From positions 62,001 through 126,000 of the forward strand of contig JALMLS010000334.1 in the NCBI GenBank assembly GCA_038496445.1: a stretch of DNA of 64,000 bases. The letters run 5' to 3'. Made by a program: the position numbers and the translations under genes. Below the pieces are notes generated by a model. That model was given only the letters and a program-made list of their open reading frames with translations. It searched no databases and had not been told where the DNA came from. Positions 2,785 through 10,606 of the stretch are shown piece after piece (position 1 is the stretch's first letter; the number at the start of each line of letters is the position of its first letter). This DNA is from Trichosphaerium sp. ATCC 40318 (Eukaryota; Protista; Tubulinea).

Positions 2785-2981
2785 TGATTATTGATTGACT
2801 TCGTCTAATCCTTATGAAAAAAGTCTACTTCAGTCCCTAGACTAAATTAGCAAGTCGTAGCAAACTATAACAACGTCACTATACCAAACGTTGGTTGTAC
2901 TCTTTACATCTTGACATCAATGATCAATTCATAGTAAAACAGTATAAAAAGAAGAATCTAATACCCCTACGCTCCGAAACA

Positions 2982-4802
2982 ATGGACAACGATAAGACTA
3001 CCAAAAAATTACGAGTTTTGCGTGAATGGCTTTTATCTACTGTCCCAACGCTCTTGGTATGTTACTAACCAATCAAATACGATTAATATACTACTAGTCA
3101 ATATTGAGGGCAATAAAACTCAATTCTCTCTCTTGTGAGTCTTTAGACGACATTAAAGATACTAGTCTCATCATACGGGACATACTTTGTGTACGCTAGC
3201 TTTTTTTGTTCTTTTTAGGCTACTACCTGGTTTGGTAAATTAATTTATACGGGCTCTAGAAACTGACGAGGATATCAAAATGGATACAACCTCGTGCTGT
3301 ATCTCAAGTAGAAGCGCCCGAAGGATTGGTACGTAAACTAAAACAATTTTTTTTTTCTCAAAACACAAAACGTTGTCTTTATTGTCGACTAATCGTCATT
3401 GGCGTACTAGGCACGCGTTACTCGTGTTCTTATAAATGCTATTGTAAACGTAGAAAATTCCTTATCCGACATTACAAATGCGGTAAAGACGAACCAAGTC
3501 CCTCTTATTAATATCATACGCATTGTACGCGTAGTAAAGGATCTACAATCAATACTAGATCCAAATGCGTCACCACAAGACACTCTTGCCTTTAAACAAA
3601 AGCCGAAGACTCGAACGGCCACTACTCCATCCAAACTACGACATTCTTCTCCTAAAAAGCCTAAAGACAAAACGGTAACGATATCTGACACGCCTGACAT
3701 AAAAGAGACACAATCGCACGTAAGAAAACGATCTGCAGCTGCAACACCTGACCATTTTCGGCAGTACGCCATACGTAGTATGCGTGCAAGTGGCGGAGCT
3801 ACCGTTAGGTCTCAGTCTAACATTGAGAAGCCTACAAAGGAATCTTGGAATACAAAAGACGCCATTAAGCAAGGTACAGACAGTAATATCAGATCTCGCA
3901 ATGCCAGCCTTCCTGGTGGGCTACAACTCAAAAAAAAATCAAAAAAATATATTGCAGCTACTGCAAAGTATATATCGGACTCTAAGAGCTCTACAAAGAG
4001 CTCAAAGTCCCGTAGAATAAAAAGCCCAAAAGGAACATCAAGAAAGAAGCATACACAACAAACAAGGGCTGTTACACTACCAGAAGGTTCTGTATCTCCT
4101 AGAAATCAGAAATTTGAGATGAAGCCTACTTCGTGGTCGAGAACAGTTCCTACAGGTGAAGAGAATGGACCAGGCTCTATAAAGTTCAGTAAACGTAGGG
4201 CAGAGAGTCAAGGGTTATTAATCTCCACTGAGACAAGAAAAGCTATACTTTCAACGTCTCGAGACGCAATAGATATTCCTGTCCGAAAACCGGATATACT
4301 ATCACCAAGGCATGATAGCCTATCATCTCAGTCTCTATCCTATGAAGAAACAAAAGCTACACCCGAAGGTATTTTCTCAGACGACGATGAGACGATTTTA
4401 CATAAAGTTCTTGTTAAATCATCAAATGATGAACCTGAATACGATTCTTTACCTCCTGTGAAGAAAGGTAATAAGAGACATTCTCTATACCTTGTTATAG
4501 ACTCTCTTCCTACGCCAATGGCAGTTGGTATGAGGCCACCATCGATATACAACACACCACCTGATGAGGATTCAATCCGAAAAACTTTAGTACCAAGACA
4601 ATTAGCGCCACATCAACGAGGTAATGTACCACCAGCTATAGAAGCTGCTCAAGAACATTACGCTTCTCTGCCACGAAGTGAAACCGGAACCAATGCTAGA
4701 TATGCACCTTTACCAGCCAAGAAACCACTCATTCAACATCAAGAAGAAAACGAATCTCATTACTCACCTTTACCTCTCAGGAAACCAGAGGCTGGGAACT
4801 AG
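2982..4802 (+). CDS. Hypothetical protein: helical N-terminal domain plus long basic low-complexity tail with YxxLP motifs
   Basis: Short exons splice in frame into the long 3411-4802 exon. Confidence 0.6.
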
Positions 4803-5166
4803 GTAGATAGCCTCTATCTCTTGTATATGTAACAGAGCTTCATGGCCTTCGAAGGTGTTGTTTTATCATAGAGCTTAATGCAAATGAGAACGCACGTGTA
4901 CTTTACTCACTTAATAAAATACTTTTTTGAGTCTTCAACACAAAATCTCTTGACTTCTTTTGCCCAACCTCGACAACCTCGAGTTGCCTTGCGTCTGTTT
5001 ACGGTTTTTACAACTCGTGGTTTACGGTGACGTTCAGCATTGTGGGTTTTTTCTGTTAAGTTGCTCCGTGGCTAAATTACGAAGCGTTTCAACTAAGTAG
5101 CACTTCGGAGTCTTGTCTGCACTCGTTGAGGATTTATTGGAAGTAAAATCTATTTGTTTGTCAAAA

Positions 5167-7553
5167 ATGGCCATGGTAATGCCCATGAAGTCGTTGTTAG
5201 TGCTTGTAAAGTGCGTTGGCAGTTTAGTTTTTGATTGTTCTGAATAATTGTCGTAAAGGGAGGCTGGCACGCTCGAGACGACAGAAAGAGACCCGTACGT
5301 GGAGCTTTTATTTGATGATGAAGAAGAAGACGTAAAAATCGGCGCATCTGTAGAGAAACAAGAAACCCTTGTGCCCAAGAACAATGCTGGTACCTATTAC
5401 GCAAGTTGCCGTTACTAAATTAGTACAGCCCAACAAAACAGTGCTGAGAGGCAAGAAAACAAGGATTTAAGTATGTAACGCAGCACCACAATTTTTTTCT
5501 AAGCCCTTCAAGGCAAAAACGTAACATTCGTTCCAAACACTGATATTGGTACTGGATTCATATTTATAAAGCAACCAATAGCGAAACTAGTTGATGTAAG
5601 GCTTGTTTAACAATCACAAACGATACATAATTTAACTGAACAAAAAGGAGACATCACAACTATCAGCACTCATTGAAGCTCTTCCAAAAATTGGTGACTT
5701 GGATCTCATTGCTGTGCGTAATTTTTTTCGACCTTCCAGACACGTGTGAAATGTAGTCGCATTTTTTTGTGAAAACTTTGGTTGCAACTTGGATGAGTAC
5801 ATTGACAACTTTCGTTGTTGGTCATATGCGTGTACTACGCCCTCAAGAAATTGTTGGGGTTTTTCTTTTAAAAAAAGTATGTACTTGACATTCTTACGGA
5901 CGCTTTAGAGCTCCCATATGGTGGGTGGAAAGCATCGTGTTATTTCTTTGAGGGTTGCCAAAAAACTTGGAGACGAAAATGAAGGCCCTTACTTGGCCTT
6001 GAAAGGTATAGGGAGTAAAACACACTATTAAAAATGACAACTATCTTAGTCGCTCTTGGACCTGGTGCAACTGTCGGTCAAGTGATTCAATGGGCAATGG
6101 AAGTCACAAGAGAAGATAAAAACGCTATTTTACATAATGATGAAGAGTTCTACTTATTGAGTGTTGCGGATGACGATGGCCTACCAGATGAGGATTTTCC
6201 AAGTACACAATGATCTTTTATTAAATTAGTAACATTTTCGATCACGTGCCTCCATAATAGCATGGACAAAATTGACTTATTTTAATAGCTTTGGACAGAA
6301 CAAGAGATATTTATCAATTTAACTTTGAAGAGTTCGTATTGATTAGAGATCCAGATCATAAACGTAAGTACAGCTCTGGTTTAAACCAATATACTTCTTG
6401 TTGCTACTACTATTATTCTTTCGCGTGTACTAATCTTTTTGGGTGTAGCAAAAGGAGCGAGGTCACTTAAGTATCTTAAGATTCATTTACCTGATGAGCA
6501 ATACCAAATTGCTGAATACAAAGAACACCAAACGCTCAATGACCTACTTGAAACTGTTTGTAATAAGCGTAAGCTTGATAAGGACGACTTTTGTCTTCGT
6601 GTGCGTGCATGAAATTTTTTTTTTTCCTTCTTTCTATTGTAGACTTCTTGTTGGCTTCGTTCAGCAACTGCTTTCGCGTTACCCTTGATTTTGTATTTTT
6701 CGACCAAACCACTTGCAAAAACCTCGCCTCAACTTATGGATACGGCCATACAACCATGAAAACTCCGTGTCTCTTTCCGAACCGCGAAGATAAGCATGGT
6801 ATGGCCCTGCCAGTACTTGGGTCCGTGAGGACCAGGGAACGTAGGGTGCTGTATTCATTTTGCTTTTTTTTATGCTGCCTCCTTTACAAGAAGCGGTGAA
6901 GACCAAGCATTATTGGTCCGGCAATATCGATAAAACTGTGTCAAGTTCGTAAATTAACTTTTTTTTTAGTTGCTTTGGGAGAAAGAGAAAGAATTGATAA
7001 TGGACACCAAAGTTGGTTCATTGGGTGTAGCAGAGATTGCTTTAGTTGCTCTAAAAGAAGAACAGCCAACAAAGCAAAAGACAGTAGTTATGACGCCTTT
7101 TTTTGCAAAAGAATACAAGGTAACACTTTTTTTTTTGAAAGTTAATTTTAAGTGATTTGTATTGATTCTCTCTTAGGAGTATGCTTGTTTCAGAAAAGTT
7201 GGTGTTAGAAATAAAGAGCGTATTCTTGGTATTGATGGTGATGGTATCAAGTTTAAAAAGAAGAGAAATGGAGCTACTAAGGTAAGCAATCTTCAAGAAA
7301 TTGTTGTCAGTTTTGGGTTTTTTAACAGAGTTTTAGTCGTTGCGGCCCATCAGCGAGTTAGTACGCTGTGAACTTGGCAGAAAGCCAGGTGTTTTTACTC
7401 TTACATTCAAAGGGAAGAATACAACACAATCAATGGAGTCTAAATTCTCAGGTAATCGCACAGAAAGACGAAAACTGGAAATCTTGGTTGCTAATTTTTT
7501 TACCTTTAGAAGAAATTGTGGAGAAGATCAAGTTCCTGATGGAGAACGCTTAA
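5167..7553 (+). CDS. SIN1: TORC2 subunit SIN1/Avo1/RIP3 homolog (CRIM, RBD, PH)
   Basis: CRIM-like LSVADDDGLPDEDFP..DRTRDI; RBD KIHLPDEQ...LLETVCNKRKLD; PH KERILGIDGDGI...EEIVEKIKFL. Confidence 0.8.
6738..6857 (+). rRNA. 5S rRNA gene inside a SIN1 intron
   Basis: 120 nt GGATACGGCCATAC...CCGAAC..CGAAGATAAGC...CAGTACTTGGGTCCGTGAGGACCAGGGAA...GTGCTGTATTC; helix I GGATACGGC/GCTGTATTC pairs; followed by TTTT and T8 runs. Confidence 0.93.
6858..6871 (+). terminator. Pol III oligo-T terminator of the 5S gene
   Basis: TTTTGCTTTTTTTT immediately after the 5S 3' end. Confidence 0.75.
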
Positions 7554-8436
7554 AGTGTACAGTAAGAACATGGAAGAAAAAAGAAATAGAGAATCAATAA
7601 TTGGTGTTTCTCGTATTTGTACACTAGACAAAATGAGGCAAAGAAAAAACAAAAAAAAAAAAGAAATATTGTTCTTTTTGAAAAGTTTAGTAAAAAGGTA
7701 ATTGTAAAAAGTAAGTCTTTGGCGTAAAATCTCTTTTGTTTATCTGTCGTATAAGGTTCCACCATACTCCAAAGTGAGTGTGTTGATACGTTTTGTGTAG
7801 CGCAGTGGTTAGTCACCAACCAAACTTTGATACCAATCTATGTTTGTAGTAAAATATTTTCTGAAAATTTTTTTTTGTTGGAGCGTACGTGCTAGGTTTA
7901 AACGTTCGAAAGTTTGGACAATAAAAGCAAAAAAATTATGGGTTTTCTTGGGGACAATTTGGTTGACAAACTCTTGTAAAACAGCCAATTACGTACCATT
8001 TCTTAGAGCTCAATAGGTAGGCATAGAAATTTCAAACGTTGTCCATAAAAACTTCAGCTTTAAATGAAATCTGACATGCAGTAAATCTATCTAGATAGAC
8101 GGTATTCAGAACATATATGGTTTGATTTTATTCGATCATTTGTTCGTTATTTTTAATCCCCGGTAAATAGATTGTGGTGCTAACATTTGCATAAAAAGCC
8201 GTCTACGTAATTGTCACCCTTAAAGAGTGGTATGATGAAGTTCGCTACACCCTTTGTATGCTACACTACACGTGTGAATCAAAATATTGAATAAAATGTC
8301 CCTGTCCGAAAAACCTGGCATAGTTTAAACAATCCAACGCTGCCTCGGATGTATTTCTGGGCAAAGAATCAGTGTGATACGAGGTACACACTAAATACAA
8401 TATCTCGAGACAACAAGCACAACTGCTGCGTTCGTT

Positions 8437-10055
8437 ATGTCAACAAGTAAGTGCTATCACTTCAACTAAGCTATTGTTTATCCTCTAATACTAGTACTTA
8501 GTATTGTTTCTTCTCCTTTTGGTTTTTATTTCGTGTTCGCTGGCAGCGCTTACGCAACAACAAAAAGATGATTTATTGACCTATCACAACGAAGCGAGGT
8601 ACGTCACGTGTTTTTTGAGCGACAAGTTTCCGAGCGGAAAACTTTTGAAACATTCTTTGCTTTTAGAGCCTTAAAATGTGTCGGTCCAATGACGTGGGAT
8701 GATGCCCTATCAAACACAGCACAAGCTTGGGCTGACGGAGGAAACGAAGGTCATAACCCTAATAGAACACAGGACTACGCAAACTTCGGTGGTATCGGAT
8801 CTGTAGGCGAAAACGTCGCTGGTGGATCATGGTATTCATTTTTTAGGTTGTGCACCTCGCACAGCAAAAATTGAATGGTTTCTGTTTTGTTCGCTGTCTT
8901 ACTCTATTCTAGGCCTAGCTATAGTCTTAAAGACCACTTTGACGCTTGGGTAAGCGAAGAATCAGTACCTTGTAATACAGGTGGTGGTCATTACACTCAA
9001 GTGCTTTGGGAACAATCAACAAAGCTTGGTTGCGGTTTTAAACTCAGACCTAATGGTGAGCCACGTGCTATTTGCCTAACAAACAGTAGTGTTCGTGTTC
9101 GGTATTGGCTTAACTCTGTGATTTTTAGGAAAGTGGGGAACTATTGTTGTAATCCCTGCAGGTACGACTAGGTACTAAATAGTTACTGCTGGTGGAAATG
9201 GAGTAGGCTGGATTGATGTTGTGATCGGGGTAACATGTTGGAACATCAGTTCGCGACACCTACTCCTTCTGGACTTCCAGATGGGTTCAAGGGGCCTTTG
9301 ACCGACGCTGAAAGACTCGCTATATTGGAGGCACACAACACAAAGCGGCAAGTACATCCAAAGCAGTTTTATAACAGTCTACATCAATTGAAACTATCAC
9401 GTGTTTTTTTACCTTTCGGGAATACTAAGCTTTTCCTCTAGCGCTTCGCGATGTGTTCCTCGACTTGAATGGGACTCTACACTCGAGGAAGTTGCTCAAG
9501 ATTTCGCTGATCGTGGTGTTTTCTCTATCAATAGTAACAGACATGAAGATTACCAGAATCTCGGTGGAGACGGTTATATCGGTGAGAACGTAGCTGGCTT
9601 CTTGTATGAACATACCTCTAGCAAAATTTTTGGCTAAACTCTTTTTTAGCGGTGATGCCAAAGATACAGGTGTAAAAAATTGGGCGTCAGCCGAAGGACA
9701 GCCCTGTAATAATGGAACTGGTCAATACAAACAACTGATGTGGGAAAACAGTAAAAAAGTAGGATGTGGATACAAGATACTTACTGCATATGGTATGAAC
9801 ATATTTTGTTGGTTTTTTTTTTTGGAAATATTGTACATAGATTGTGTCTTATTATTTTTCTCAGGTGGAATGACATTCCTTGTTTGCAATTACCAACCTA
9901 CTGGTAACTACATTGGACAAGATGCCTTCCCGCTAGACAAGTGTACAAACTGTATTTCAGCCCGTAATGCAGCACATTCAGGAGCAAATACTATTAGTGT
10001 AAAAGCATCATTTTGTCTTTTGCTATTATTTGTATTGTACTCTTGTGCTATCTAG
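8437..10055 (+). CDS. Secreted/surface protein with two CAP (SCP/PR-1) domains
   Basis: Signal peptide; two HN..R, GENVA, HYTQVLW/QYKQLMW, GCG sets; VCNYQPTGN; hydrophobic C-terminus (GPI-like). Confidence 0.85.
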
Positions 10056-10606
10056 ATATAAACCAAATAGATTGTTTCTTCAAAATTTATGTTTTTCATA
10101 TAAATAGCTATTGATTGCTAACGTGGAAAGCCCCACTTTGATTGGTGGTTTTTTTTTCGGTCAAAATAAAATCACGTGTTTGTTTTCTCAAAACTTTGAT
10201 TTACATCGTCACACAGTATTTTTAGCATACTAAAATAATAAGTGAAAAAAAAGAGCTACCAATCAAAGAGACAGTGTCGGAATGTTGTTTGACACTGTTT
10301 AGAGGCTGCATACTAGATTATTCATAGCTAGCAACAACAATTCGTTTTGAAAAATATTAGGAACTTGTTTTTTCTGCAGGAACTGGTAGAAAATTAATAT
10401 GAGTTCTTTTCCCAGGTACAAATTTGAGTGCTACAGCATGAGGAAAGCGATTTTATTAGAATAAAACCATAAACGTTCCAAAATACCACTATAATTTACT
10501 GGGATACTTGTGTTTTACTAGCGCTGCGTTGGCTTCTTTGAAACATTGCTTTAACGCTCCTGTATAAGACTTCCTCTTTGCAATAAAAACTCCATACTAA
10601 AATGTA

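What the first reader, a model, noticed from the sequence alone, without database searches (positions are those of the whole stretch)
6601..6969. Complete 5S rRNA gene nested, sense-oriented, in an intron of the TORC2 subunit SIN1
Seen: the RBD exon ends ...DDFCLR at 6600 and resumes LLWEKE at 6970, defining a 369-nt intron far longer than its neighbours. It holds a 120-nt 5S with intact helices and an oligo-T terminator. Established: 5S genes are usually tandem, rDNA-linked or dispersed intergenically, and are Pol III transcribed. Inference: this lineage may disperse 5S genes into Pol II introns as independent Pol III units, or this is a recent insertion. Any regulatory link to TOR signalling is speculative.
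Basis: partly seen in the sequence, partly recalled or inferred. Interest (0 to 1): 0.8.

Follow-up and report, generated by a model that had tools for sequence, protein, structure and literature searches.

The report
5S rRNA gene inside SIN1 intron
A complete 5S ribosomal RNA gene sits, in the same direction as its host, inside a spliced intron of the TORC2 subunit gene SIN1 in an amoeba-like protist; it seems to be one case of an unreported genome-wide habit, but whether this copy is transcribed was not shown.

Summary
Rfam places a full-length 5S rRNA at 6738-6857 (+), 93.7 bits, followed directly by TTTTGCTTTTTTTT. Spliced contigs from four public runs (three studies), plus an independent JGI cDNA contig, join 6600 to 6970 exactly (GT..AG, 369 nt skipped). 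The organism's own 416-aa protein from that cDNA passes Pfam thresholds for CRIM, RBD and SIN1_PH, and the RBD match runs across the junction. The intron is the longest of 15 mapped here (median 57 nt).

The 5S body is identical to the 5S found in RNA-type contigs of two runs. Those contigs carry at least three other downstream flanks, so the 5S genes are dispersed. One other copy also shares a 30-nt block at -43 to -14.

The best reading is an independent Pol III gene nested co-directionally in a Pol II intron. Its transcription from this locus was not shown.

This scan had already noted the same layout on other DNA of this genome (UPF2, ABCE1, NMD3, eIF4G and others), always in sense. I could not verify those notes.

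Nine literature searches found no report of functional nuclear 5S genes housed in spliceosomal introns. No close SIN1 relative was retrievable, so the age of the insertion is unknown. A link to TOR signalling has no support.

The parts
6738..6857 (+). 5S rRNA gene, full length (120 nt)
   Evidence: Rfam RF00001, 93.7 bits, model 1-120. Canonical fold, z -3.6. Body identical to 5S contigs in X3 (6738-6865) and X6 (6756-6867, 0 differences).
6858..6871 (+). Putative Pol III terminator, TTTTGCTTTTTTTT
   Evidence: Read directly from the sequence. Contigs of other 5S copies still fit the window up to 6868-6871 before diverging (loose ends), so the trailer is shared between copies.
6695..6737 (+). 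Upstream block shared with at least one other 5S copy (-43 to -1); -43 to -14 carries no listed difference. Candidate upstream promoter element or edge of the duplication unit.
   Evidence: X3 contig record 4 fits 6695-6865 with 9 differences; the 6 listed lie at 6725-6735, and the sequence before 6695 is unrelated. The block is unique in the window. Its function is inferred.
6601..6969 (+). Intron 9 of SIN1 (369 nt; GTGCGT...TTTTTTTTTAG), host of the 5S gene. A putative branch site TTAAC lies at 6954-6958.
   Evidence: Joint 6600|6970 in 4 runs from 3 studies. cDNA L001. The branch site is read by eye only.
6449..6600 (+). SIN1 exon 9 (first part of the Ras-binding domain)
   Evidence: Pfam RBD 32.3 bits, profile 2-42 of 69. 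Contig pieces.
6970..7117 (+). SIN1 exon 10 (rest of the Ras-binding domain)
   Evidence: On P0001 the RBD match covers residues 238-304, profile 2-68 of 69, across the junction. Contig pieces.
5086..7708 (+). SIN1 transcription unit: 13 exons, CDS about 5167-7553, product 416-418 aa
   Evidence: Joints. Open frame. P0001 is 100% identical to the model. L001 alignment.

Best explanation
This is a genuine, intact 5S rRNA gene of the dispersed type, lodged co-directionally in intron 9 of the SIN1 (TORC2 subunit) gene. Most likely it is its own RNA polymerase III unit. Under that reading the internal control region (A box, intermediate element, C box) recruits TFIIIA, TFIIIC and TFIIIB, possibly helped by the shared block at -43 to -14. 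Transcription would start at 6738 and stop in the T-run at 6858-6871. Separately, Pol II reads through the whole unit as part of the SIN1 pre-mRNA, and the spliceosome removes all 369 nt. Shown: the 5S is complete; it lies in a spliced intron on the sense strand; its sequence equals the 5S present in RNA-type data; other copies with other flanks exist. Inferred: Pol III transcription of this particular copy, the promoter role of the upstream block, and the cause of the sense orientation. Possible causes are selection against pre-mRNA complementary to abundant 5S, selection against head-on polymerase encounters, or oriented insertion through T-run microhomology with the T-rich sense strand of introns.
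For: Full-length Rfam match with the conserved positions of the A-box and C-box regions intact. Canonical fold. A T4GCT8 run directly after the 3' end. The 5S body is identical to contigs in X3 and X6, while X3 shows three different continuations after 6868-6871 and another before 6695, which means several loci share one sequence. Upstream positions -43 to -14 are shared with another copy; that is not expected for a retro-copy of the mature RNA. The junction 6600|6970 appears in 3 studies and in JGI cDNA. Host introns are T-rich on the sense strand: in the 14 other introns, T 357 against A 278 and 13 T-runs of 5 or more against 3 A-runs; the flanks of this intron have T 78 against A 41. Scan notes report many further sense-intronic 5S genes, and tRNA genes, in this genome (unchecked).
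Against: No read-level data were available. All four runs were contigs, so no 5' or 3' ends, strand or locus-specific expression could be seen. No contig was shown to cover the unique intron flanks 6601-6694 or 6872-6969, so the placement of the 5S in this intron rests on the assembly itself. With identical copies elsewhere, this one could be silent. The orientation of a single locus is a coin toss, and the genome-wide bias comes from unverified notes that may be selectively recorded.
Confidence: 0.7

Rival explanations
1. The copy is intact but silent. It would be a recent DNA-level duplicate that landed in the intron, is not used (for example, shut down by passage of Pol II or by chromatin), and has not yet decayed.
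For: Several identical copies exist, so one silent copy would cost nothing. No locus-specific expression was seen. X1 and X4 have no coverage over 6674-6840, though these appear to hold only spliced mRNA contigs.
Against: There are no differences from the expressed consensus over 120 nt, and the terminator and upstream block are both preserved. If the many sense-intronic copies noted elsewhere are the main 5S gene pool, they cannot all be silent (unchecked).
Confidence: 0.17
2. 5S RNA is made from the host transcript. Pol II transcribes it as part of the SIN1 pre-mRNA, and the 5S is trimmed out of the excised intron, as happens with intronic snoRNAs.
For: Sense orientation, here and reportedly at every other noted copy, is what host-dependent biogenesis requires. 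In the predicted fold of the whole intron the 5S folds as an autonomous domain. Intron-derived tRNA-like RNA from a Pol II transcript is documented in Arabidopsis GUT15 (PMC6152437, abstract seen).
Against: 5S is needed in ribosome-scale amounts, whereas signalling genes such as SIN1 are normally expressed at modest levels (general knowledge, not measured here). A Pol III-type T-run follows the 3' end exactly and is shared between copies. The internal control region and an upstream block are conserved. The intron as a whole shows no special structure (z -0.56).
Confidence: 0.08
3. Assembly artefact: a 5S repeat was wrongly placed in this intron by the genome assembler.
For: 5S is multi-copy, and no independent DNA contig spanning the intron flanks was obtained.
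Against: The assembly holds 137 nt and 112 nt of unique sequence on either side of the 5S within an intron whose two splice sites are confirmed to the base. The cDNA gap is exactly 369 nt with GT..AG ends. The same layout is noted at many other loci (unchecked).
Confidence: 0.03

Closest known systems
Dispersed 5S rRNA genes of fungi and protists (e.g. Neurospora, Schizosaccharomyces pombe, Yarrowia lipolytica; the Yarrowia dispersal and tRNA-5S fusions are cited in PMC2911113)
   Same: Single 5S units scattered through the genome rather than in tandem arrays or in the rDNA unit. Each has its own flanks, and the RNA sequence is the same between copies.
   Different: Those copies are described as intergenic, or as fused to tRNA genes in Yarrowia. 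Here the unit lies inside a spliceosomal intron of a protein-coding gene, on the sense strand, and reportedly this is the rule in the genome.
tRNA genes nested in introns of protein-coding genes (e.g. in Caenorhabditis elegans and mammals; from my own knowledge)
   Same: A Pol III gene with an internal promoter sits inside a Pol II intron and is presumed to be transcribed independently. Scan notes report intronic tRNA genes in this genome as well.
   Different: The nested gene is 5S, which has a type 1 TFIIIA-dependent promoter. I found no report of functional 5S genes housed this way.
Intronic snoRNAs and other intron-processed RNAs (including the Arabidopsis GUT15 tRNA-like RNA, PMC6152437)
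   Same: A stable structured RNA encoded in sense inside an intron of a host gene.
   Different: Those RNAs lack their own promoter and terminator and depend on host transcription. This unit carries 5S internal promoter elements and a T-run terminator.
5S-derived SINEs and 5S pseudogenes or retro-copies (SINE3-type elements; Cassandra retrotransposons carrying 5S in their LTRs, cited in PMC10946416)
   Same: 5S-like sequence dispersed into genes and introns.
   Different: This copy is full length and identical to the expressed 5S. It has no unrelated body, no A-rich tail and no LTR context, and it shares sequence upstream of +1 with another copy.

Membership tests
5S rRNA (Rfam RF00001) | Covariance-model score above the curated gathering score over the full model | tested here: met
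   93.7 bits against 38; model 1-120 of 120; not truncated
5S rRNA (Rfam RF00001) | Three-way junction with helices I-V | tested here: met
   The CM alignment has only two non-standard pairs. The MFE fold reproduces the junction, z -3.6.
Functional Pol III type 1 gene | Internal control region (A box, intermediate element, C box) and an oligo-T terminator | tested here: inconclusive
   The conserved consensus positions in the 50-97 region are matched in the Rfam alignment, and T4GCT8 follows the 3' end. No functional test or protein-binding data.
Functional Pol III type 1 gene | Transcribed from this locus by Pol III | not testable with these tools
   All runs were contigs, with no ends or strand. 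The sequence equals the expressed 5S, but identical copies exist elsewhere.
SIN1 / AVO1 / MAPKAP1 (TORC2 subunit) | CRIM domain, then a Ras-binding domain, then the SIN1-type PH domain, in that order | tested here: met
   P0001: CRIM 101-224 (46.1 bits), RBD 238-304 (39.1), SIN1_PH 327-414 (30.9), all above gathering. PDB matches to MAPKAP1 and S. pombe Sin1 CRIM, E 8e-5.
SIN1 / AVO1 / MAPKAP1 (TORC2 subunit) | N-terminal TORC2-anchoring region | tested here: not met
   No Pfam match in residues 1-100 of P0001 at E 0.01 or better. The region may be too divergent. This does not affect the host-gene call, which rests on the three domains.
Nested intronic gene | Lies wholly within an intron that is actually spliced, on the host's strand | tested here: met
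   Joint 6600|6970 in 4 runs from 3 studies and in JGI cDNA. The 5S is on the + strand, as is SIN1.
5S-derived SINE or retro-pseudogene | Truncated or diverged 5S head; copy starts at +1; A-rich tail; target-site duplication | tested here: not met
   Full length and identical to the expressed 5S. Similarity to another copy extends 43 nt upstream of +1. No A-tail. Only weak T-rich direct repeats.
Intron-processed RNA (snoRNA-like biogenesis) | No own promoter or terminator; maturation depends on host transcription and splicing | tested here: inconclusive
   The terminator and internal promoter elements argue against it, but dependence on the host could not be tested.

The most novel reading that the evidence does not exclude
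In this amoeba-like protist most or all nuclear 5S rRNA genes live as single copies inside spliceosomal introns of unrelated protein-coding genes, always on the sense strand. This would be a mode of 5S organisation beyond tandem arrays, rDNA-linked units and intergenic dispersal. It could be produced by oriented insertion (microhomology between the T-runs flanking the 5S unit and the T-rich sense strand of introns). Alternatively it could reflect a functional need for co-directional Pol II transcription, such as open chromatin, avoidance of antisense pairing with 5S, or even partial host-dependent biogenesis.
Probability: 0.4. Interest if true: 0.75.

Novelty: new variant of a known kind. Interest (0 to 1): 0.55.

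Why it matters
5S rRNA genes are the textbook case of Pol III type 1 genes. Their genomic organisation (tandem, rDNA-linked, linked to other repeats, or dispersed) has been catalogued for decades, and I found no report of functional copies housed in spliceosomal introns. If the sense-intronic layout is the rule in this genome, it gives a natural system for two questions. The first is how a very active Pol III unit, with its stable TFIIIA/TFIIIC/TFIIIB complex, coexists with Pol II elongation and splicing across it. The second is how 5S units spread. As a single locus it is a tidy, well-supported example rather than a discovery in itself, and this scan had already seen the same layout elsewhere in the genome. 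The host being SIN1 appears incidental.

Tried and rejected
1. Orthologous intron in relatives. The word search with the full-length protein P0001 returned only P0001 itself. The exhaustive search with the CRIM exon gave only P0001 plus two unrelated repeat proteins. The age of the intron and of the insertion could therefore not be tested.

2. Other 5S copies or relatives in public collections. Two exact 5S patterns found nothing in metagenome contigs and one found nothing in genome contigs.

3. Independent DNA contig of the locus. A look-up of the neighbouring 340-aa ORF product found nothing on record.

4. Target-site duplication or an introner-like origin. Only short T-rich direct repeats were found (23 nt at 78%, 16 nt at 81%). 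These are of a kind expected by chance in T-rich introns. The 16-nt pair 6685-6700 / 6854-6869 coincides with the edges of the unit shared between copies, so I record it as a lead, not a finding.

5. Relationship between the 195-nt intron and the 5S intron. There is none: local alignment score 20 against shuffles of 18.8 +/- 2.6.

6. Special structure of the whole intron. There is none (z -0.56).

7. Other RNA families in 3000-8200 at E up to 1. Only a sub-threshold chance hit.

8. Organism guess (a nucleariid). The cDNA comes from JGI sample 3300016894, and earlier notes call the organism an amoeba.

9. The bacterial-type promoter and terminator scan is not applicable and found nothing.

10. 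Literature. Nine searches (and 52) and three papers checked (PMC7050145, PMC3439972, PMC2911113; also PMC10946416) gave no report of intronic nuclear 5S genes. Absence from this open-access library is not proof of absence.

Full report
**What is there**

The window is eukaryotic DNA of about 37% G+C with many very short introns. Rfam finds one family above its gathering score in all 64 kb. It is a 5S rRNA at 6738-6857 on the + strand, 93.7 bits (gathering 38), covering model positions 1-120 without truncation and with only two non-standard pairs.

The 120 nt fold into the usual three-way junction, at -45.7 kcal/mol and z -3.6 against dinucleotide shuffles. The gene is followed at once by TTTTGCTTTTTTTT, 6858-6871. 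There is no second copy in the window and no tRNA gene.

**The host gene and the intron**

I laid the contigs of four public runs on 3000-8000. Runs X1 and X3 come from one sample; X4 and X6 come from two other studies.

- All four hold spliced contigs that join 6600 to 6970, skipping 369 nt with GT..AG ends. Three have 148 nt on the shorter side and the fourth has 34 nt.
- The same contigs define eleven further SIN1 introns and three introns of the upstream gene.
- Concatenating the exons in a local script, only to check the frame, gives one open reading frame from MAMVMPMK to FLMENA-stop.
- I did not send that joined model to any search tool.

Instead I ran the exhaustive protein search with the CRIM exon alone (6049-6201, by reference). 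It returned P0001, a 416-aa protein identical to the model. P0001 is encoded on two cDNA contigs of JGI sample 3300016894. Those contigs align to 6449-6600 and then 6970-7117.

On P0001, Pfam gives three matches, all above the curated cut-offs:

| Domain | Residues | Bits |
|---|---|---|
| CRIM | 101-224 | 46.1 |
| RBD | 238-304 | 39.1 |
| SIN1_PH | 327-414 | 30.9 |

The RBD match covers profile positions 2-68 of 69 and runs straight across the 6600|6970 junction. Exon by exon, the same families appear in the same order but weaker. PDB matches are to human MAPKAP1 in TORC2 structures and to the S. pombe Sin1 CRIM domain.

The host is therefore a short SIN1. The 5S lies in intron 9 of 12, on the coding strand. 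The 15 mapped introns measure 39, 41, 42, 44, 48, 52, 55, 57, 58, 69, 82, 85, 86, 195 and 369 nt, so this intron is the clear outlier. Without the roughly 177-nt 5S unit it would be about 192 nt.

**Is this copy the cellular 5S?**

Two of the four runs (X3, X6) hold 5S contigs.

- The X6 contig fits 6756-6867 with no difference.
- The X3 contig fits 6695-6865 with nine differences. The six that are listed lie at 6725-6735, upstream of the gene.
- The 5S body of this locus is therefore identical to the 5S assembled from those samples.
- X3 also shows three different continuations after 6868, 6870 and 6871, and an unrelated sequence before 6695. At least three other loci therefore carry the same 5S and the same T-run trailer with different flanks. 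The genes are dispersed, not tandem.
- The other copy also shares 6695-6724 (-43 to -14 from the start), while -13 to -3 differ. Shared sequence upstream of +1 argues against retro-copies of mature 5S RNA. It fits either a conserved upstream promoter element or a DNA-level duplication unit.

**What could not be seen**

All runs were contigs, so there is no information on RNA ends, strand or locus-specific expression. No listed contig covers the unique intron flanks.

**Mechanism**

The anatomy is that of an ordinary Pol III type 1 gene. The conserved residues of the A-box to C-box region are matched in the Rfam alignment, and a T-run sits at the 3' end. I therefore read it as an independent Pol III unit that Pol II traverses and the spliceosome discards (confidence about 0.7).

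The alternatives are:

- an intact but silent duplicate (about 0.17);
- maturation of 5S from the excised intron, as for snoRNAs (about 0.08);
- mis-assembly (about 0.03).

The snoRNA-like route would explain the sense orientation. It fits poorly with the amounts of 5S a cell needs, with the conserved terminator, and with the unremarkable structure of the intron as a whole (z -0.56).

The sense orientation of one locus means nothing by itself. If the bias is general, three causes are open:

- selection against pre-mRNA that is antisense to an abundant RNA;
- selection against head-on polymerase encounters;
- oriented insertion.

On the last point, introns here are T-rich on the sense strand. 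In the 14 other introns T is 357 against A 278, with 13 T-runs of five or more against 3 A-runs. The shared 5S unit is bounded by T-rich stretches, and the 16-nt direct repeat 6685-6700 / 6854-6869 coincides with its edges. This is a lead, not a result.

**Context from the scan**

The scan found this layout before on other DNA of the same genome. Notes report intact 5S genes nested in sense in introns of UPF2, a CTD phosphatase, eIF4G, an SMG7-like gene, ABCE1, NMD3, CAF-1 p60 and others.

One follow-up (s1-409515) reached the same reading and also found no published report. No note in this genome combines '5S' with 'intergenic' or with 'antisense'. These notes are unchecked and may be selectively recorded. 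I could not reach the rest of the genome with the tools, so I count them only as leads.

**Comparison with what is known, and novelty**

Dispersed 5S genes are well known in fungi and protists, and nested intronic tRNA genes are known in animals. 5S-derived SINEs and pseudogenes also occur in introns. This copy fails the SINE/pseudogene features and meets those of a bona fide 5S gene.

Nine full-text searches, including the phrase 'intronic 5S' (0 papers), and four papers read in part found no description of functional nuclear 5S genes housed in spliceosomal introns. I rate it a new variant of a known kind.

The hosts listed in the notes are functionally unrelated, and nothing ties the 5S to TOR signalling.

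**Limits**

- No close SIN1 relative could be retrieved, so the orthologous intron could not be compared and the age of the insertion is open.
- Exact 5S patterns found nothing in the metagenome or prokaryote-genome collections.
- The identical tool-returned protein P0001 served in its place.

Noticed in passing
window 7745-7813: A 69-nt segment just past the SIN1 3' end fits contigs of three runs that continue with unrelated sequence on both sides, with depth about 547 in X6. It contains a tRNA D-arm-like motif (GTAGCGCAGTGGTTAG), but ARAGORN and Rfam call nothing there, and it is unique in the window. It may be a fragment of a repeated or highly expressed element.
   Followed up: partly
window 5714-5908: The second-longest intron of SIN1 (195 nt against a median of 57). 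It has no Rfam match at E up to 1 and no similarity to the 5S intron. It could hold an uncatalogued small RNA.
   Followed up: partly
window 6685-6700 and 6854-6869: A 16-nt T-rich direct repeat (81% identical) coincides with the two edges of the 5S unit that is shared with other copies. It could mark a microhomology junction or a remnant of a roughly 169-nt repeat period, or it could be chance.
   Followed up: partly
window about 2895-4802 (+): An upstream gene with three short introns (joints 3055|3097, 3190|3260, 3327|3410). Its 463-codon last exon is rich in Ser, Lys and Pro and has no Pfam match. It ends about 280 nt before the SIN1 transcript starts.
   Followed up: partly
window about 8500-10100 (+): Tandem ORF fragments with CAP/PR-1-like motifs (for example GHYTQVLWE..KLGCG), seen by eye in the ORF list. 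Not tested against Pfam.
   Followed up: no
window 5141 and 5178; 5153, 5166, 5950, 5953: Small differences between the window and transcript contigs. In X1, one base is missing at 5141 and 5178 is A>G. In X6 (another organism label), there are four substitutions. These suggest strain-level variation.
   Followed up: no
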